46,693 nucleotides of DNA from Octopus bimaculoides (taxonomy: Eukaryota). The notes beneath the pieces are model-generated. The model had not been told where the DNA came from and did no database searches. It saw only the letters and a program-made list of their open reading frames with translations. Below are positions 6,309 through 46,693 of the stretch, in pieces (positions within the stretch are counted from its first letter, which is position 1; every line of letters begins with the position of its first letter). The DNA lies in NCBI RefSeq assembly GCF_001194135.2, contig NC_068982.1, positions 111,660,760 through 111,707,452 on the forward strand. Direction: 5' to 3'. A program made the translations under genes and the position numbers.

Positions 6309-6700
6309 TTGTTGTTGTTGTTGGCACTCCGTCGCTTACGACGTCCAGGGTTCCAGTTGATCCGATCAACGGAACAGCCTGCTCGTGAAATTAACGTGCA
6401 AGTGGCTGAACACTCCACAGACACGTGTACCCTTAACGTAGTTCTTGGGGATATTCAGCGTGACACAGTGTGACAAGGCTGACCCTTTGAATTACAGGCA
6501 CAACAGAAACAGGAAGTATGAGTGAGAGAAAGTTGTGGTGAAAGAGTACAGCAGGGTTCGCCACCATCGCCTGCCGGAGCCTCGTGGAACTTCAGGTGTT
6601 TTCGCTCAATAAACACTCACAACGCCCGGTCTGGGAATCGAAACCGCGATCCTATGACCGCGAGTCCGCTGCCCTAACCACTGGGCCATTGCGCCTCCAC
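6309..6700 (-). mobile_element. ~390-bp tRNA-derived SINE with (CAA)n tail, full length
   Basis: Minus-strand head has A box TGGCCCAGTGGTTAGG and B box GGTTTCGATTCC. The tail is (CAA)n. A 13-bp TSD taagcattaggtt lies at 6296-6308 and 6701-6713. A near-identical copy is at 19043-19427. Confidence 0.9.
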
Positions 6701-7920: not shown

Positions 7921-8134
7921 AAGGTGACGAGTTGACAGAATCGTTAGCACGCTAGGCAACATGCTTAGCAGCATTTCGTCCGTCTTCACGTTCTGAGTTC
8001 AGATTCCGCAGAAGTTGACTTTGCCTTTCATCCTTTCGAGGTCGATAAAATAAGTACCAGTGGAACACTGGGGTTGATATAAATCGACTTAAACCCTCCT
8101 CTGAACTTGTTGCTCTTGAGTCAAAGTTTGAAAT
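7921..8134 (+). mobile_element. ~210-230-bp tRNA-derived SINE (most abundant family here), with TSD
   Basis: A-box-like gagttgacagaatcgttag, B-box gagttcagattcc, core gactttgcctttcatcctttcgaggtcgataaaataagtacc. Direct repeat caatattaagagg at 7902-7914 and 8135-8147. Confidence 0.85.
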
Positions 8135-8549
8135 CAATATTAAGAGGAGAGAGAGAGAGAGCGAGAGAGAGAGGAGAATTGCATGTATAGTCTATTGTTT
8201 GTGCTTACATAAATGTGTGATTATAATTGTACATGTGTATACAGATGTACCGTTATTATTCGGTTTCAAGTTAAGGCTAGCTGAAAGATGGAGAATACTA
8301 TTTCTTTTATGTAGAGACTCATAAATTGATTTGTTTTTGTTTTAACATCTGACTTCAAGAAGTAACGTATGTAGAATGGTCTGTTCGACTGACCTTGTAT
8401 ACAGAGTTGTCTATATTCCAAGTGGCGTTTTGAGTAGACTAAGTCTTTTTCTGTTGACGGTAATGTGTGTAGAATGAAACTATAATTTGTTAACAACTGC
8501 GAGTGTAGAATGAAGCTGACTGGTTAGGTACGCCTATTGTCGCATAATT

Positions 8550-9450: not shown

Positions 9451-9623
9451 TCCTTTGACACACACACACAGAGCCTACAAACACACACAGATGTCTATCC
9501 ATTCACACACACACACATGCACACATACTCACTTGCCCAAGGTTCAATTTGGAGGGATCAAAACCAGAACAACATTCTTAACAACATTTCTTAAGTGTAA
9601 TTAATATTTATTAACTTCGTTAC

Positions 9624-9812
9624 GGTGGCGAGCTGGCAGAAACGTTAGCACGACGTTCTGAGTTCAAATTTTGCCCGGCTTTCGACTTAATCTTTCACCC
9701 TTTCGGGAGTCAATAAAATAAGTACCAGTTGGGTATCAAGAGTTGATGTAATCGACTTAGTCCCTCCCTCCCTCAAAGTTGGTGGTCTTGTGCCAAAATT
9801 TGAAGTCAATAT
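9624..9812 (+). mobile_element. Short tRNA-derived SINE copy abutting the Helentron 5' end
   Basis: ggtggcgagctggcagaaacgttagc head, gagttcaaatt B box, tail ggtcttgtgccaaaatttgaagtcaatatt. Confidence 0.85.
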
Positions 9813-10925
9813 TTATTTACTTCCGCCAAGGGAGGAAGTTATGTTTTCATCGGCATTGGTTTGTCTGTCTGTCCCTCTGTCTGTCCCTCTGTGTGCAAAA
9901 TAACTCAAAAGGTTGTGAACGGTATTTAATGAAACTTGCAAGGAAAGTTGGTAATGACACAAGGAACAGATGATGAAATTTTGGTAGTGTCCAGGAATTT
10001 TTATATATCCTTGAAGGATTTTTCATTTGTTATATTTACTTTAGATGAAGTATTACAATGTTACGTTGTTTGAAGTCTTTCTCTGATTATCTCCCTTGAA
10101 AACACGTTCATGGTTTTCACGTAACCTATAGTGGCATTGCTGTTTCCAAAGTTTTATTTTCGTTTCTCTATTAGTAATTTTACTCGCGTGTCTATCTTAC
10201 TAGAAACTGATGGATAAAGAGATCAAACTGCATAAACAAACGGCAGCGAAACAGTTCAGAAACTAAATGACACTAACATATTCAAGGGTTGCTAAAAGCA
10301 GCAGCAGAGGAGGAGGCAGTGGTAGCAACAACTGACGCTGGACCCTTGAGGGATGATTGATACTATACTGAACACAGAGTGATGTAAAGTAGGTAGGTAG
10401 GTTTGGTTTGGTAAGTAGACAGATACCTCTTTTAAAAGTAGCTTATATTGAAAACTGTTCATACTGACCTGACTAGTAGTTGAAAACAACTGATAGAGAA
10501 CTACACACACAACTCCAGTTGTGTCTAAGAATAATCTTTTCTACTATAGACACAAGGCCTGAAATTAATCATTTTCTGAAACACTTTCACTTGCACTAGA
10601 CTCACACACACCATCACTTGCAGACATGATCACTAATACACCAGCACTTGTAGATGGAGTAGTATATTTCTTTTTAAAAAAGAAGTCTAGAGTTATTTGC
10701 TTAAAAGAAGCTTTGTTTCGCTCTCTATACATTTCTCAGTAACGCGCAGAACCATTTGTTATGGTAGTAGAAACTATTGCACTTTATTCACAATTTCACA
10801 TACTTGAATCCTGTGCTTGAAAAATATAACTTGTAAAAGAGCTTCAGTAAGACACCAGCTGATCTTACAGGAGTGACTTATCAGATAGTAGGCCTACTTT
10901 GGAAAAACATTCAACCACAGCAGTC

Positions 10926-12074
10926 ATGCCTCCCTCTAGATCTAAAAGTGTGGAGCAACGAAAGAAAGAAAATGCAGAGCGCATGAAAAGGAAAAGGCAG
11001 GAAGAAGCACCAGCGGCTGCCGACAGTCGCCGTGCGACTGACAGTGTACAAAGCGAAGACATAGGGAAAACGAAACGCCGGAGGCTGCGGAGATTCACCG
11101 TGCGAGTGACAATGCATTATCCCTCTTCTGAAACTGTGATTACTCGCCAGCCTGACGCAGACGACTTTATGTTTGCAAAGCTCATGCTCAACGCTAAAGC
11201 AGATATCTTCAAAAAAGTCAGCGATGTCATGGAAGACAAGGATGTTCCCGAGGATACTTCCTTCGAAGATTTCCTGCAAAAGGCTGATGTCAACCCGCAG
11301 TGTGTGGGGAAACTAGTGAAATCGGAGAAACAGGTGGTGTTGAAGCTTCAACCTTCAGAAAGGTGGATCAACCAGTATAATCCGAAGATCCTCAAAACTT
11401 GGTGTGCCAACATGGACCTGCAGTTCATCATGGACCCATACTCGTGCATCATGTACATCACCAGTTACATGATGAAACGTGAGAGGGCTATGAGTGAACT
11501 GCTGAAAAAAGTAGCTGAAGAAAGCAGAGGTGAAGACTTGAAATCAAAACTGAGAAAAGTAGGATCAGTTTTTCTGAACAACAGAGAAGTTAGTGCTCAG
11601 GGGGCTGCTTACAGGATCCTTTCCCTGCCATTGAAGAGGGCTAGTCGAAAAGTGGTGTTTATCAACACTGCACCAAAAGACAAACGTGTGTCAATGCTTA
11701 AGCCGCAGAAGATCCTCCAAGGTATGGACGAAGACGATGAAGATATCTTTTGTACGTCACCTCTTGATCTCTATGCCATGCGACCTGATGTTCTCGAAGA
11801 TATGTGCTTTGCAGAATTTGCAGCCACTTACACAACTGGAGGAAAAGATGCTCCTGATGATGCAGCTGACCACATCTCTGATTCCCTTAACCATGAGATC
11901 TTGACAACTATGAACCAGTTTGGGTTCGACCAACTAGTCCAAAATCCCACCACCGACTATGGAAGCCTTCTAGATCATGTTTACGTGAACCAGGATCGGT
12001 GTCCACAAGTCACCGTAACCGACTGTTACTTTTCGACTATGATGTTGTGTGTGTATCACTCAAGTTTTAGGTAA
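10926..12074 (+). CDS. Helentron Rep/endonuclease deletion-fusion ORF (non-functional transposase derivative, helicase absent)
   Basis: ATG at 10926 (the track's 10899 start is TTG). WINQYNPKILKTWCANMDLQFIMDPYSCIMYITSYMMK matches the Helitron2 Rep region including the YxxxYxxK tyrosine motif. REVSAQGAAYRILSLPL follows. GFDQLVQNPTTDYGSLLDHVYVN matches the C-terminus of an APE/EEP endonuclease. Confidence 0.8.
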   Translation: MPPSRSKSVEQRKKENAERMKRKRQEEAPAAADSRRATDSVQSEDIGKTKRRRLRRFTVRVTMHYPSSETVITRQPDADDFMFAKLMLNAKADIFKKVSDVMEDKDVPEDTSFEDFLQKADVNPQCVGKLVKSEKQVVLKLQPSERWINQYNPKILKTWCANMDLQFIMDPYSCIMYITSYMMKRERAMSELLKKVAEESRGEDLKSKLRKVGSVFLNNREVSAQGAAYRILSLPLKRASRKVVFINTAPKDKRVSMLKPQKILQGMDEDDEDIFCTSPLDLYAMRPDVLEDMCFAEFAATYTTGGKDAPDDAADHISDSLNHEILTTMNQFGFDQLVQNPTTDYGSLLDHVYVNQDRCPQVTVTDCYFSTMMLCVYHSSFR

Positions 12075-12199
12075 TTGTTGTTTCTTTTTAGTTGTATGGT
12101 GAAGCCAGCTTGCTGTTGTCATTGATGTATTATAACTGCTTCAGATGATTCCTGCTTTTAGAGGGTTTAAAAAAAAAAAAATCATATGGCTGTGTTATT

Positions 12200-12335
12200 T
12201 TTTTTTACCCCTGCCAAGGAGGTTATGTTTTTGCCGGCGTTGGTTTGGGAAATTGGGCGATTTTCAGCATGCGTATATATGGGTGGAAATGAGCTGCTTG
12301 GCGGAGGTCTGCGCTCTCCGAGTGCTTTTCTAGTT
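12200..12335 (+). mobile_element. Minimal HINE-like unit: second 5'-type terminus plus the 3' terminus
   Basis: ttttacccctgccaaggaggttatgtttttgccggcgttggtttg (12203-12247) resembles the 9816-9860 start and lies about 90 bp upstream of the 3' subTIR and hairpin. Confidence 0.65.
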
Positions 12336-12347
12336 AACTTTGTGAAT

Positions 12348-12572
12348 GCGACGAGCTGGCAAAAGCGTTAGGAGACCAGACAAAATGCCTAGGGACATTT
12401 CGCCCGTCTTTACGTTCTTAGTTTAAATTCTGCGGAGGTCGACTTTGCCTTTCATCATTTCGGGATCGATAAAATAAGTACTACTTAAATTCTGGAGTCG
12501 ATGTAATCGAATTACCCCACCCCAAAGAAAAAAAATATTACTAGTCTTGTGTCAAAATTTGAAACCAATATT
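12348..12572 (+). mobile_element. Short tRNA-derived SINE copy just after the Helentron 3' end
   Basis: gcgacgagctggcaaaagcgttag head; core gaggtcgactttgcctttcatc; tail gtcttgtgtcaaaatttgaaaccaatatt. Confidence 0.85.
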
Positions 12573-12849
12573 TATTAATTTTGGAGTTGTGCCCCTTTCT
12601 TTCTAAAGCTAATGGCCTTTAGCTAAATTTGTGATCTTGTTAAATTAAGTAAACTAGCATCGTCTTGGTTTTATTACTCTATCAAAAATTTAGAGTGTTC
12701 CTTGAGGATGAAAATGAAGTATCTACCCTTCCATAGATATGTCTAGCTGGCATTGAGAGGATGCTCTTTTTTACTCAATGTTTGTTTAGCTCAGCTACAA
12801 CCGGAGATCAGAAAAACAATAATAACGGTAGTTTTTGATATAAGTAAAA

Positions 12850-13150: not shown

Positions 13151-13845
13151 ATGAATGACAAAGGTGACATCATAAAGAGCATAATCGACGCTTTATCTTT
13201 TCTGCTAGTTCTCTGCTTTGCCACCAAAATAATAGTAACAAATGTAACGCGAGAAAGGCGAAAACGAAGATGAAAGGTTGTCATGCACAGAATTAGAAAT
13301 AAAAGTGCTTTAAATATGTTTTTCTTATCTAAATAGTTTGTTTCTATATAACAATTCTTTAAGAAGTATTTTATCCAAGTTGGCCAAATTATTTCTTCCA
13401 CAAAACTAAATTGGAGTTGAAAAATTGCCATTGCGCTGTATAATGACGCCGTGTTTTGCATACATGATAATATACACAGGGCTCTGCCTGTCTATTTTTC
13501 TCTCTGTGTTTCTCTCTTTCTCTGTTTTTCACTCTTTCCTTCTATCTAATATCATATTGAGCTAGTTGTGGCAGTTGATCAGTAAATAACAGACGGTAAA
13601 GAGTAGAAGTAGGAGTGTGGGGCATTCATAGGCCAACTACTTTCCTGAAACTGTTAAAATCTAAGTTGAGAAGTGATGACTGCAGAGATGAGTATCTGTA
13701 GAGAGTTGGCAACTATGGGCGCAGACCATGGTTGAGAGTTAATAACTGTGGGTAACTTTAGAACGTGGGTAGCCTAGATGTAAATTGAATCAACATAGAT
13801 GTAGAGTCAACTTAGTGAAAGTACTGCAGTATTAAGTATCATTAA

Positions 13846-14060
13846 GGCGGCTAGCTGGCTGAATCGTTAGAACGCCACACAAAATGCTAAGCGGCATTTC
13901 GCCCATCTTTACGTTCTGAGTTCAAATTCTGAGGTTGACTTTGCCTTTCATACTTTTGGGGTCGATAAAGTAAGTACTGGTTGATTACTGAGGTCGATGT
14001 AATCGACTTACTTCTTCCCACGAAATTGTTGGTCTTGTGCCAAGATTTGAAACCAATATT
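13846..14060 (+). mobile_element. Short tRNA-derived SINE, full length
   Basis: ggcggctagctggctgaatcgttag head, gagttcaaattc B box, same core and tail as the other copies. Confidence 0.85.
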
Positions 14061-19042: not shown

Positions 19043-19427
19043 TGTTGCTGTTGGCACTCCGTCGATTACGACTTCGAGGGTTCCAGTTGATCTGATCAAC
19101 GGAACAGCCTGCTCGTGAAATTAACGTGCAAGTGGCTGAGCATTCCACAGACACGCGTACCCTTAACGTAGTTCTCGGGAGATTCAGCGTGACACAGTGT
19201 GACAAAGCTGACCCTTTGAATTACAGGCACAACAGAAACAGGAAGTAAGAGTGAGAGAAAGTTGTGGTGAAAGAGTACAGCAGGGTTCGCACCATCCCCT
19301 GCCAGAGCCTCGTGGAGCTTTAGGTGTTTTCGCTCAATAAACACTCACAACGCCCGGTCTGGGAATCGAAAGCGCGATCCTATGACCGCGAGTCCGCTGC
19401 CCTAACCACTGGGCCATTGCACCTCCG
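19043..19427 (-). mobile_element. Second copy of the ~390-bp tRNA-derived SINE
   Basis: Colinear and highly similar to 6309-6700. Imperfect TSD gtgagaata (19034-19042) / gtgaaaata (19428-19436). Confidence 0.9.
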
Positions 19428-30234: not shown

Positions 30235-30428
30235 TATTCTTTCTACACTAGGCACAAAGCCCGACATTTTGGAGGAAAGGAACTAGTTGATTACATCGAC
30301 TCCAGTGCGAAACCGGTGCTTATTTTATTGACCCCGAAAGGATAAAAGGCAAAGTCGATCTCGGCGGAATTTGAACTCAGAACGCAAAAGCAGGAGAAAC
30401 GCTCCTAAGCATTTTGCCTGGTGTGCTA
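30235..30428 (-). mobile_element. Short tRNA-derived SINE
   Basis: ggcaaagtcgatctcggcggaatttgaactcagaacg core and B box on the minus strand; tail ctacactaggcacaaagccc. Confidence 0.85.
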
Positions 30429-31288
30429 ATTGTGTTCTAATTTTTCTAATTTTTATTTATGATTTCTCTAACTTTTTATCAGCTCCTGGCGATGTATGTA
30501 GTATATTGTAATTTTTACTTGTATGTGCATGATGAACCGAAGGGAAAGTAGGAATCGTCAAGTTTATAAAATTTACACAAGATCAAACAAGACTAGATAG
30601 GAAATAATTGATAAATTGCATATATATTCTATATATTCCTTACAGAATCGATGATTAATGATGGAAGTACTGTACCTTGCTAAAATAAACAGATAAAGTC
30701 GAAAAGTCAAGAAACACTCTTTGATTTCTGAAGTAAAACGCTAAGGGTCAAGCATTGAAATTTCAATTCTGACAGTAATTTTAACCATAATTCCACTCGC
30801 CTTACCAAGCTTGGACTAACCTTAAATAATCTACACATGTGTTTGGGGTTGATAAAAAAACAGAAGGCGGGGAGCTTCAAATTTTTCCAGTGCTGTATTC
30901 AGTATGGTGCAAATGGCAAATTATAAAAAATTTTGCCAAATAAAAAAAACTTATAAAAAATTTCTAATTTCTTGTCACTCTAGTTATTAGTCAATAATTT
31001 GTACATATTTCTTAATGCTATATACTATTAAAGACATAAGATTAAAAAAAAAGCACGTTATATTTAATAGAATTGTCGGGTGTTACCCAAGAGTAGCGTG
31101 GAAGAAAGATGAACGTTTAATCTGATATTTCACATTGAGTAATTATGGAAGTTTCGAAAGTACACTTTGTTGAGCTATCCCTTGGGTATTAGTTGGCCTT
31201 AACCCGGCCCCGGTCCAAGTCCTTTATAAAATGGCAACAATATGCCAACTTCATCCAGAAGAGAAGACCATGCATATCTATAAATTCC

Positions 31289-32426: not shown

Positions 32427-32542
32427 GTACGCACATTCTTACATACGTACAAACAGGATAATAACCGAGGGAAAATAACACTCAACGCATTTAGTTGAGG
32501 CTTTAAGAATACGTCCACATCCTCAGATATACTCAGTCAGAT

Positions 32543-32714
32543 TGGGGAGAATGTATAAGTCGATTAGATCGACCCCAGCACGCAACTGTTACTTAATGTA
32601 TCGACCTCGGAAGGATGAAAGACAAAGTCGACCTCGGTGGAATTTGAACTCAGAACGTAAAGATAGACAAAATACCGCTAAGCATTTCGCCCGGCGTGCT
32701 AACGTTTCTGCCAG
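32543..32714 (-). mobile_element. Short tRNA-derived SINE
   Basis: gacaaagtcgacctcggtggaatttgaactcagaacg...gctaacgtttctgccag. Confidence 0.85.
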
Positions 32715-38350: not shown

Positions 38351-38504
38351 GAAGGCATTTACTTTGATAAAAAGATGTGTTCAAAGCAAAGCTGGACAAA
38401 ACACCACGTGCTAGTCACACCAACAACACCGTCTTTTATATAGATATACATACGTACATATATATATATATATATATATATGTACGTATGTATATCTATA
38501 TTGC

Positions 38505-38719
38505 TTTTATTTCTTTTACTTGTTTCAGTAATTTGACTGCGGCCAAGCTGGAGCACCGCCTTTAGTCGAGCAAATAGACCCCTGGACTTATTCTATATGT
38601 AAGCTTAGTACTTATTGTATCGGTTTCTTATGCCGAACCGCTAAGTTATGGGGACGTAAACACGCCAACATCGGTTGTCGAGCGATGGTGGAGGGGGACA
38701 AACAGACATACAAATACAT

Positions 38720-38770
<51 letters not shown>

Positions 38771-38825
38771 CGAGGGGCTTCTTTCAGTTTCCGTCCACCA
38801 AAGCCACTCACAAGGCTTTGGTCGT
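38505..38825 (-). mobile_element. Third SINE-like family with internal (TA)n tract
   Basis: gactgcggccaagctggagcaccgcctttagtcgagc...ccgctaagttatggggacgtaaacac, then a microsatellite, then ggcttctttcagtttccgtccaccaaagccactcacaaggctttgg. It is homologous in opposite orientation to 22930-23115. Confidence 0.7.
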
Positions 38826-42950: not shown

Positions 42951-43239
42951 AGACAATACCTAGCTTTTGATTTAAACCTGAAAGTTTTAACGAAAAGATA
43001 TAAATGAGTGATTCGAAATTAGAACTGGTATATGAACCAACAATGAAGGAGTCTCTACTAGGCTGCTTGTTATGTTAGAAATAGAATCCAAGTCTCCGTG
43101 TAACCTTTCCTCGGTATCTTTAAAACAGGAGATAATATAGTATTAGCTACTTCATGTCTGGCAAGAGGTAAGATTGAAACCCTTTTGATCATAAGTCCTC
43201 TGCTCGATTATGATTGACCTGGGGCTAAATAACAACAAG

Positions 43240-43355
43240 ACTTTGCTTTCATTCTTTTGGGGTCGATAAATCAAGTACCAGTTGCATAGTGGGGTCGATC
43301 TAATCGAATGGCCCCCTCCCCCAAAAGTTCAGGCCTTGTGCCTAGAGTAGAAAAA
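43240..43355 (+). mobile_element. 5'-truncated short SINE
   Basis: gactttgctttcattcttttggggtcgataaatcaagtacc...ggccttgtgcctagagtagaaa. Confidence 0.75.
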
Positions 43356-46099: not shown

Positions 46100-46494
46100 T
46101 TACTCTAGGCACAAGGCCCGAAATTTTTTAAGAGGTGGGGGCCAGTCGATTAGATCAGCCCCCACTACGCAACTGGTACTTAATTTATCGACCCCGAAAG
46201 GATGAAAGGCAAAATTGACCTCGGTGGAATTTGAACTCAGAAAGTAAAGACAGACAAAATACCTATTTCGTTATTGCCCACAAGGGGCTAAACGTAGAGG
46301 GAACAAACAAGAACAGACGAACGGATTAAGTCGATTACATCGACCCCAGTGCGTAACTGGTACTTAATTTATCGACCCCGAAAGGATGAAAGGCAAAGTC
46401 GACCTCGGCAGAATTTGAACTCAGAACGTAACGGCAGACGAAATACCGCTAAGCATTTCGCCCGACGTGCTAACGTTTCTGCCAGCGCACCGCC
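46100..46494 (-). mobile_element. Head-to-tail SINE dimer (full copy 46264-46494 plus truncated copy 46100-46263)
   Basis: Two cores aaggatgaaaggcaaa(a/g)t(t/c)gacctcgg with different 3' tails; junction at aaatacc (46257-46263). Confidence 0.85.
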
Positions 46495-46693
46495 TTACCT
46501 ATATGCATATATTGTCACTTGTATGTATATATCTTGAATGTGTATGCGTGCATATGAGTGTATACATGTTTGTATGTACACACACGCACCGACTACGGCT
46601 GCATGGCTGAGACGAGTAAAAGAGTATATATGTCTCTCTCTCCCCCACCCCTTTCTCTCTCTCTCTTTGTATATATATATATATATAAATATA

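What the first reader, a model, noticed from the sequence alone, without database searches (positions are those of the whole stretch)
10926..12074. Helentron deletion derivative keeps one open frame fusing N-terminus, Rep tyrosine region and endonuclease C-terminus
Seen: this is the only long, non-repetitive ORF in 46 kb, while every other TE here is full of stops. It joins a basic N-terminus (MPPSRSK...RMKRKRQ), a Rep segment with YITSYMMK (11454-11477), and an APE/EEP C-terminus (TTDYGSLLDHVY). Known: autonomous Helentrons encode Rep (HUH plus YxxxY), a PIF1-like helicase and often an endonuclease. Inferred: two large deletions (junctions near 11100-11120 and 11890) removed the HUH motif and the whole helicase, yet both stayed in frame. 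That could be chance in a young copy. It could also mean an amplified non-autonomous subfamily producing a truncated Rep (a possible dominant-negative regulator), or early domestication.
Basis: partly seen in the sequence, partly recalled or inferred. Interest (0 to 1): 0.72.

Follow-up and report, generated by a model that had tools for sequence, protein, structure and literature searches.

The report
Decayed internally deleted octopus Helentron copy
This is an ordinary dead copy of a rolling-circle transposon (Helentron) in an octopus-type genome that lost most of its gene through two internal deletions, and its long open reading frame is best explained by luck and fairly young age, not by function.

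Summary
The ORF is real: 10926-12074, + strand, 382 codons. It is the only ORF of at least 120 aa in the window that is not a microsatellite or N-run read-through.

The three-part make-up is confirmed by homology:
- aa 1-42 are the native N-terminus of an octopus Helentron family.
- aa 64-319 are the second half of Rep, with the invariant YITSYMMK motif, plus the Rep-helicase linker.
- aa 320-370 are the last ~50 residues of the endonuclease.
- The HUH motif, DUF6570, OTU, the helicase and most of the endonuclease are absent.

The claim that both deletions stayed in frame is only half right. Junction 2 is in frame. Junction 1 is out of the native frame, and a 1-nt deletion 65 nt upstream (11050|11051) happens to connect the ATG to the Rep frame, so aa 43-63 are out-of-frame filler. 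A second 1-nt deletion (12034|12035) and a His-to-Tyr change destroy the endonuclease's final SDH motif.

Coding and non-coding parts are equally diverged from two Octopus vulgaris copies, which carry different deletions. About 10 lineage-specific replacements hit conserved Rep sites. No database protein spans either junction.

Verdict: a neutrally decaying, non-autonomous deletion derivative of a known kind. Low interest.

The parts
9809..9863 (+). Possible true 5' end of the element, or a fragment of a related short non-autonomous element. It contains CCGCCAAGG (9823-9831) and resembles the 5'-end-like segment at 12197-12247. Whether it belongs to this copy is uncertain.
   Evidence: 55 nt at 74.5% identity to 12197-12247. 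It is not shared with L004, whose homology starts at 10033.
10033..10925 (+). 5' non-coding region of the Helentron family (leader or promoter region), shared with an O. vulgaris copy.
   Evidence: Aligns with L004 8083-8952 at 7.9% substitution divergence with 4 gap events.
10926..12074 (+). The composite ORF: 382 codons plus a TAA stop.
10926..11051 (+). Native N-terminus of the family's protein (aa 1-42). It is basic and is the first unit of a ~67-nt imperfect repeat.
   Evidence: P0105 aa 1-37 match 10941-11051 at 92% in the ORF frame. L004 DNA is collinear. No other homologue was found by word search.
11050..11051 (+). Site of a 1-nt deletion (frameshift) relative to P0105 and L004.
   Evidence: Gap in the window against L004. 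P0105 aa 38-51 (KRRHRVNETPEAAE) match 11051-11092 in a different frame at 93%.
11052..11114 (+). Out-of-frame stretch (aa 43-63, SEDIGKTKRRRLRRFTVRVTM). This is the second N-terminal repeat unit read in the wrong frame. In the native frame a TGA would follow at 11128-11130.
   Evidence: and direct reading.
11115..11116 (+). Junction 1. Homology to the left parent (L004) ends at ...GTGCA, and Rep homology (FHYPSSETV) begins at CATTATCCC. There is a 2-nt microhomology (CA). The deletion removes the rest of the N-terminal repeats, DUF6570, OTU and the first half of Rep including HUH.
11115..11882 (+). Second half of the Rep domain plus the Rep-helicase linker (aa 64-319).
   Evidence: 77% identical to P0001, and 56-68% to many proteins that carry PF14214 upstream or PF05970 downstream. 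Collinear with L001 7699-8484.
11454..11477 (+). YITSYMMK, the two-tyrosine (Y-x3-Y-x2-K) motif of the Rep nuclease.
   Evidence: Y177, Y181 and K184 are invariant in alignment A1. The pattern is the same as Helraiser Y727-LFK-Y731-IYK, printed. The HMM alignment of that stretch is weak and offset, so the equivalence is inferred.
11876..11883 (+). Junction 2: linker ...GACCACAT(N)CCTGAT | GATTCCCCTAACCA... of the endonuclease. There is a microhomology of at least 4 nt (TGAT), and the shared GAT codon keeps the frame. About 2.5 kb is deleted (helicase plus most of the endonuclease).
   Evidence: L003 and L004 continue upstream into ...GDFNVDLLDS, so this breakpoint is private to the window copy.
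11883..12034 (+). Last ~50 residues of the EEP/APE endonuclease in the native frame (aa 320-370).
   Evidence: 80% to P0098 and 76% to P0099. Weaker matches to PF03372-bearing proteins P0101-P0104.
12034..12038 (+). A 1-nt deletion (CC to C, at 12034|12035) and a CAT-to-TAT change (12038). Together they destroy the terminal S-D-H catalytic motif. The native frame resumes at 12035 and would stop at TAG 12068-12070.
   Evidence: Second tblastn HSP of P0098/P0099 in another frame at 12035-12067. Three-way DNA alignment. Polarised changes.
12075..12333 (+). 3' non-coding and terminal region of the element. Features: an internal 5'-end-like CTGCCAAGG at 12211-12219, the inverted partner CTTGGCGGAGG at 12297-12307, a short GGAG..CTCC palindrome at 12303-12319, and a terminal CTAG at 12330-12333 followed by TT.
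   Evidence: Shared with L003 and L004 up to ...TTTTCTA(G/T)TT, after which similarity stops. The hairpin energy is not significant (z = -0.6).

Best explanation
Window about 10033 (possibly 9820) to 12333 is one non-autonomous, internally deleted copy of an octopus Helentron family. The intact gene of that family reads: basic repeats, DUF6570, OTU, Rep (HUH plus YY), PIF1 helicase, EEP endonuclease.

Two DNA-level deletions with short microhomologies removed about 1.5-2.5 kb each. This is typical of abortive gap repair or template switching.

The 382-codon ORF is a by-product, not a maintained gene:
- Deletion 2 happens to be in frame.
- Deletion 1 is not in frame, but a random 1-nt deletion 65 nt upstream joins the ATG to the Rep frame through 21 nonsense-free out-of-frame codons.
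- A further 1-nt deletion alters the last 12 codons.

The copy has since drifted neutrally, about 2-4% on its own branch. Any product would lack the HUH metal site, the helicase and a functional endonuclease, so it cannot transpose anything. If the element ever moved, it moved in trans through its retained termini.

Shown: the homology of each segment, the junctions, the frameshifts, and equal divergence of coding and non-coding parts. Inferred: the deletion mechanism, neutrality of the Rep segment, and the absence of function.
For: Segment homology.

Near-full-length relative L001 has the gene order DUF6570, OTU, Helitron_like_N, linker, PIF1, Exo_endo_phos. The window is collinear with it on both sides of a ~2.5 kb gap.

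O. vulgaris copies L003 and L004 share the 5' leader, the N-terminus, the EEP tail and the 3' end up to CTAG. They have different internal deletions and broken frames.

There are frameshifts at 11050|11051 and 12034|12035, and a His-to-Tyr change in SDH.

The junctions show 2-nt and at least 4-nt microhomology and no GT..AG.

Pairwise substitution divergence is 7.3-11.3% in coding and 7.9-10.3% in non-coding segments. Window-specific changes are 2.8% in the EEP coding part and 4.6% in the 3' non-coding part. They include 3 replacement and 2 silent changes; one of the replacements lies next to the 1-nt deletion and may be an alignment artefact.

In the Rep part there are 10 window-specific replacements against 11 for the paralogue P0001. 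Several fall at sites invariant in all outgroups: A73T, S185R, R282L, P318S, and in 6 of 7, R141L and E226G. The window deviates at 7 of 74 strongly conserved columns (9.5%), against a median of 4.3% among homologues.

The chance of no new stop codon is 0.43 at K = 0.02 and 0.24 at K = 0.034.

No protein more than 77% identical, and none spanning a junction, was found among 5.8 billion clusters that include octopus proteomes.

[quoted passage not shown] In O. vulgaris, Helitron-type elements expanded at a JC distance of about 0.09, and some copies are still 2% or less diverged (PMC13282606).
Against: With the indel rate estimated here (about 0.08 per substitution), the chance that the 920-nt Rep-to-EEP stretch escaped both stops and frameshifts is only about 0.02-0.13, depending on K. 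So the open frame is mildly unusual for a single copy.

Synonymous change in the Rep segment could not be measured, because no close DNA relative of that part was obtainable. Purifying selection on aa 64-319 is therefore not formally excluded.

The compensating frameshift near junction 1 could in principle be read as frame restoration.

Copy number and transcription in the source genome were not testable.
Confidence: 0.85

Rival explanations
1. The copy belongs to an amplified non-autonomous subfamily whose truncated Rep is produced and damps transposition of the autonomous element. The product would have a basic N-terminus, the Tyr motif and the linker, but no HUH or helicase. It could act by titrating DNA ends or partners, as a dominant-negative in the manner of the P-element KP repressor.
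For: The ORF is open over 382 codons, and the family's 5' leader is retained upstream. The YxxxYxxK motif is intact. The open frame has a single-copy chance of roughly 0.02-0.13.
Against: 21 residues between the N-terminus and Rep are out-of-frame filler. Replacements fall at invariant Rep positions, at the same rate as in a paralogue. Coding and non-coding divergence are equal in the segments that could be tested. The only related copies found have other junctions. No predicted protein spans the junctions. By inference from the Helraiser structure 7LCC, the retained piece lacks the beta-sheet core of the HUH fold.
Confidence: 0.05
2. Early domestication: the ORF is a host gene, or an exon of one, derived from a Helentron and kept by selection at this locus.
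For: It is the only long ORF in a 46-kb repeat-rich window. G+C is higher there, 0.465 against about 0.37.
Against: TE leader and terminal sequences still flank it. It carries two frameshifts and has lost the catalytic His. It is absent from all predicted proteomes searched. The higher G+C is simply that of the TE coding sequence.
Confidence: 0.02
3. The junctions are not genomic deletions. They would be either a retro-copied spliced transcript of a Helentron gene or an assembly chimera in a draft genome.
For: An A13 run lies at 12169-12181, about 95 nt past the stop. The window contains several N gaps.
Against: Neither junction has GT..AG in the parental sequences. The element keeps non-transcribed-looking 5' and 3' terminal regions. 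The A run sits in a T/A-rich spot present in all three copies, and the shared sequence continues 150 nt beyond it to the common CTAG end. Both junctions lie in uninterrupted sequence far from the N runs.
Confidence: 0.03

Closest known systems
Helentrons and their deletion derivatives / HINEs (Thomas, Vadnagara and Pritham 2014, PMC4067079)
   Same: The family's gene order is Rep, PIF1 helicase, C-terminal APE/EEP endonuclease, with an OTU protease upstream (L001). It has non-autonomous internally deleted copies that keep the ends. There is a short inverted pair near the ends (CCGCCAAG / CTTGGCGG), a small palindrome 14-30 nt from the 3' end, and T residues after the end.
   Different: This copy still carries 1.1 kb of coding remnants, whereas classic HINEs are non-coding. 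Its 3' end reads CTAG like canonical Helitrons. The 5' terminus and the TT target could not be fixed because no empty site was available. The palindrome is not energetically significant.
Helraiser / canonical animal Helitron RepHel (PDB 7LCC)
   Same: A profile of the family matches the Helraiser HUH region (E = 4.8e-7). The Y-x3-Y-x2-K motif and the following F..R.VSA.EA..R motif are shared.
   Different: Helraiser has no endonuclease or OTU. The window copy lacks the HUH half and the helicase altogether.
Internally deleted transposons that encode truncated repressors (P-element KP, own knowledge)
   Same: An internal deletion leaves an ORF that joins the N-terminus to downstream parts of the transposase.
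   Different: KP elements are amplified, share one junction and have shown repressor activity. Here no second copy with these junctions was found, the join contains out-of-frame filler, and no activity is known.

Membership tests
Helentron (Helitron-like rolling-circle transposon with endonuclease) | Rep nuclease with an HUH motif | tested here: not met
   The HUH stretch (RGSPHAHTILW) is present in relatives but deleted in the window ORF. It is met for the family and not for this copy, so this copy is a derivative and not an autonomous member.
Helentron (Helitron-like rolling-circle transposon with endonuclease) | Rep two-tyrosine motif | tested here: met
   YITSYMMK lies at 11454-11477. Y177, Y181 and K184 are invariant in A1. 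The pattern equals Helraiser Y727/Y731. The catalytic role is inferred.
Helentron (Helitron-like rolling-circle transposon with endonuclease) | PIF1-family helicase downstream of Rep | tested here: not met
   No helicase sequence is found anywhere in the window (tblastn). It is present in relatives (P0016, P0021, L001).
Helentron (Helitron-like rolling-circle transposon with endonuclease) | C-terminal APE/EEP endonuclease fused after the helicase. This feature separates Helentrons from Helitrons. | tested here: met
   The remnant (aa 320-370) is 76-80% identical to the ends of PF03372 proteins. L001 and P0101 show EEP directly after PIF1. In this copy only about 50 residues remain and the SDH motif is destroyed.
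Helentron (Helitron-like rolling-circle transposon with endonuclease) | Subterminal inverted repeats, a 3' palindrome and insertion at TT without a target duplication (PMC4067079) | tested here: inconclusive
   The 3' end is defined by three copies (CTAG, then TT). An 8-nt inverted pair and a GGAG/CTCC palindrome are present, but the fold z-score is -0.6. The 5' end is ambiguous, 9823 or 10033. No empty site was available.
Functional truncated-transposase regulator (KP-like) | Several copies sharing the same deletion junction, with constraint on the ORF | tested here: inconclusive
   No junction-spanning protein was found in 5.8 billion clusters. The two related loci obtained have other junctions. 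The divergence pattern looks neutral where it could be tested. The source genome itself could not be searched.
Functional truncated-transposase regulator (KP-like) | Transcription and translation of the truncated ORF | not testable with these tools
   No RNA-seq or proteomic data were accessible. The ORF is absent from the predicted-protein collections.

The most novel reading that the evidence does not exclude
The ORF is expressed from the retained Helentron leader. Its HUH-less, helicase-less Rep fragment, carrying a basic NLS-like N-terminus, would act as a trans-dominant inhibitor of the autonomous Helentron, or would be in the first stage of host co-option. That would be the first KP-like repressor described for rolling-circle transposons.
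Probability: 0.04. Interest if true: 0.6.

Novelty: new member of a known kind. Interest (0 to 1): 0.12.

Why it matters
As it stands it matters little. It is one more decayed deletion derivative of a Helitron-like element in a cephalopod genome where such elements are already catalogued.

Its practical value is for annotation. The ORF should be masked as TE-derived and not called as a gene. The copy, together with L003 and L004, also documents that this octopus Helentron family produces heterogeneous internal-deletion derivatives through microhomology junctions.

It would bear on an open question, whether rolling-circle transposons self-regulate through truncated Rep proteins, only if junction-sharing, constrained and transcribed copies were found.

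Tried and rejected
- Pfam scan of the ORF gave no Rep or EEP hit, only a chance hit at E = 0.14. A PDB sequence search with the single ORF gave only a chance GINS hit. The retained pieces lie outside the Pfam models or are too short for them.
- A word-index search with the N-terminal 65 aa found nothing. The exhaustive HMMER search was needed to find P0105. The second hit, P0106, is a low-complexity repeat protein and was disregarded.
- Retrocopy or splicing idea: rejected. There is no GT..AG, the TE ends are retained, and the A-run is not terminal.
- Shared right-hand breakpoint idea: both L003 and L004 alignments start at window 11874. Rejected, because L003 and L004 continue upstream into the EEP GDFN motif, so the breakpoint is private to the window.
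- SINE-SINE junction at 9596-9620 as a paralogous empty site for the whole 9823-12333 insertion: the alignment is too weak to use.
- The 3' hairpin was not significant by folding energy.
- ARAGORN and TRF found nothing in or around the element.
- P0001, P0098, P0099 and P0105 are held only as UniRef or MetaClust proteins without contigs. No close DNA relative of the Rep segment could be fetched, so dN/dS could not be computed for it.
- No scan of the metagenome or prokaryote genome collections was made for the junctions. They do not hold octopus genomes, so a null result would say nothing.

Full report
**Observation.** The window is eukaryotic, AT-rich and full of microsatellites and N gaps. 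Its best protein matches are to Octopus bimaculoides and O. vulgaris. An ATG..TAA ORF of 382 codons lies at 10926-12074 on the + strand. Every other ORF of at least 120 aa in the 46.7 kb is a read-through of a microsatellite or an N run. So the observation of a single long, non-repetitive ORF is correct.

**What the ORF is made of.** A direct Pfam scan and a single-sequence PDB search give nothing meaningful. Homology searches are clear instead.
- 104 proteins match.
- aa 63/64-322 align with the part of Helitron-like Rep proteins that follows the HUH motif and precedes the PIF1 helicase. The best hit is 77% identical (87% outside one gap), to an O. bimaculoides 'OTU domain-containing protein'. 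Many proteins carrying PF14214 upstream or PF05970 downstream match at 56-68%.
- aa 319-376 align at 76-80% with the extreme C-terminus of O. bimaculoides proteins that carry the Exo_endo_phos domain.

A near-full-length, decayed relative, L001, shows the family's gene order: basic repeats, DUF6570, OTU, Helitron_like_N, linker, PIF1, Exo_endo_phos. That is the Helentron architecture described in PMC4067079. The window is collinear with L001 7699-8484 and then jumps to 10993-11157, a gap of about 2.5 kb.

A profile of the family hits the Helraiser HUH region (PDB 7LCC, E = 4.8e-7). The motif YITSYMMK (11454-11477; Y177, Y181 and K184 invariant in A1) has the same Y-x3-Y-x2-K pattern as Helraiser Y727/Y731. 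The HMM alignment of that stretch is weak, so this equivalence is an inference.

**The N-terminus.** A word-index search found nothing. The exhaustive HMMER search found P0105. Its first 37 residues are 92% identical to window aa 6-42, and it continues into the OTU domain of the same family.

**Junctions and frames.** P0105's relatives in O. vulgaris gave two 20-kb chromosomal loci, L003 and L004.
- L004 aligns with window 10033-11116 at 87%.
- Both loci align with window 11874-12335 at 86-89%.

The detailed alignments show five things:
1. The window has a 1-nt deletion at 11050|11051 relative to both L004 and P0105. After it the native reading (KRRHRENETPEAAE...) is in another frame, and aa 43-63 of the ORF (SEDIGKTKRRRLRRFTVRVTM) are out-of-frame filler.
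2. Junction 1 is at 11115-11116, with CA microhomology. It joins the second N-terminal repeat to Rep ...FHYPSSETV out of the native frame. Without the upstream 1-nt deletion, the ATG frame would stop at TGA 11128-11130.
3. Junction 2 is at about 11876-11883, with TGAT microhomology and a shared GAT codon, and it is in frame.
4. Junction 2 is private to the window. L003 and L004 continue upstream into the endonuclease GDFN motif.
5. Neither junction has GT..AG in the parental sequences, so these are DNA deletions and not splicing.

At the 3' end a 1-nt deletion (12034|12035) shifts the last 12 codons. In the native frame the catalytic S-D-H reads S-D-Y, and the native TAG is at 12068-12070.

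**Element boundaries.** Similarity among the three copies ends at ...TTTTCTA(G/T)TT (window CTAG 12330-12333).
- Upstream of that end lie an 8-nt inverted pair (CTGCCAAG at 12211 and CTTGGCGG at 12297) and a GGAG..CTCC palindrome. This resembles Helentron subTIR and palindrome ends. The hairpin is not energetically significant.
- On the 5' side, homology with L004 starts at 10033. A segment at 9809-9863 resembles the 5'-end-like sequence at 12197-12247. The true 5' end may therefore be near 9823. This remains open.
- The A13 run at 12169-12181 is a T/A-rich spot in all copies and is not a retro-tail.

**Is the open frame more than chance?**
- Pairwise substitution divergence between the window and the O. 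vulgaris copies is the same in coding segments (7.3-11.3%) and non-coding segments (7.9-10.3%).
- In a three-way comparison, the window's own branch is 3.8% (2.8% in the EEP coding part, 4.6% in the 3' non-coding part), against 5.0% and 6.2% for L003 and L004. There are 3 replacement and 2 silent window-specific changes in the EEP remnant; one of the replacements lies next to the 1-nt deletion and may be an alignment artefact.
- In the Rep part, polarising against six outgroups gives 10 window-specific replacements against 11 for the paralogue P0001. Several are at otherwise invariant positions: A73T, S185R, R282L, P318S; R141L and E226G in 6 of 7 outgroups.
- The window deviates at 9.5% of strongly conserved columns, against a median of 4.3% among 63 homologues.
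- About 3.7% of random substitutions in this ORF would create a stop. The chance of no stop is 0.43 at K = 0.02 and 0.24 at K = 0.034.
- With the rough indel rate seen between copies, the joint chance for the Rep-to-EEP stretch is about 0.02-0.13. That is mildly unusual for one copy. It is unremarkable given how many TE fragments a repeat-rich octopus genome holds, and given that the ORF was picked because it was open.

The other two copies are broken into short ORFs, in line with their longer branches. No protein more than 77% identical, and none spanning either junction, exists in a 5.8-billion-cluster collection that includes octopus proteomes.

**Conclusion.** The feature is a non-autonomous, internally deleted Helentron copy that is decaying neutrally. 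Its product, if any, would lack the HUH site, the helicase and a working endonuclease.

They cannot be strictly excluded without searching the source genome and transcriptome.

Helitron-type elements, including recently active ones, are already catalogued in O. vulgaris, with a burst at a JC distance of about 0.09 (PMC13282606). Helentrons are also known to spawn deletion derivatives (PMC4067079). The novelty is low.

Noticed in passing
L003 10001-10809; L004 8083-10699; protein P0099: A different deletion-derivative type of the same Helentron family occurs on two O. vulgaris chromosomes: N-terminus, DUF6570, partial OTU, then directly the EEP C-terminus from GDFN onward, then the 3' end. The O. 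bimaculoides protein model P0099 looks like the same type. This one, and not the window's type, may be an amplified subfamily.
   Followed up: partly
window 9611-9822, 12334-12582, 13833-14060; also about 2141-2355, 7929-8141, 30250-30430, 32542-32714, 43239-43353, 46108-46497: An abundant ~210-230-nt SINE-like repeat (GGCGAGCTGGCAGAAACGTTAG...). Copies directly abut both ends of the Helentron-derived segment. The same repeat is in tandem triplicate in L003 18100-18800. ARAGORN finds no tRNA in it.
   Followed up: partly
window 9809-9863 vs 12197-12247: Two copies of a 5'-end-like sequence (..CCGCCAAGGAGGTTATGTTTT..GGTTTG). The segment 12205-12333 by itself looks like a ~130-nt mini-element with both Helentron-type ends. 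It could be a nested or tandem HINE, or a duplicated terminus.
   Followed up: partly
proteins P0005, P0031, P0072: The Rep-linker segment is 64-66% identical to proteins from a killifish (Austrofundulus limnaeus) and a porcelain crab (Petrolisthes manimaculis). That is about as close as the non-octopus mollusc-like hits. Such a patchy distribution is compatible with horizontal transfer of this Helentron lineage.
   Followed up: no
window 6332-6699 and 19062-19426 (vs L003 11947-12315, reverse); window 38462-38771 (vs L003 15962-16275): Other interspersed repeat families shared at 80-82% with the O. vulgaris loci. They were not classified.
   Followed up: no
window 11005-11049 and 11072-11116: The N-terminal coding region is built of imperfect ~67-nt (22-aa) repeats (E-x-P-x-A-A-x-x-R-R-A-x-D-S-x-Q-K-R-R-H-R). 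L004 has a further unit. Junction 1 falls exactly at the end of the second unit.
   Followed up: partly
L001 2947-4377 and 11982-14780: The near-full-length Helentron relative is flanked by a 476-aa ORF upstream that resembles a hAT transposase (my own reading of its sequence; no Pfam hit is on record for it) and by a reverse-transcriptase (RVT_1) ORF on the opposite strand. This is a TE-dense region in an unidentified host (ENA ERZ27247860).
   Followed up: no
window about 29.5 kb, 33.3-33.8 kb, 38.9-39.3 kb, 39.9-40.3 kb: N runs (assembly gaps) flanked by CA/TA microsatellites. The window comes from a draft-quality assembly.
   Followed up: no
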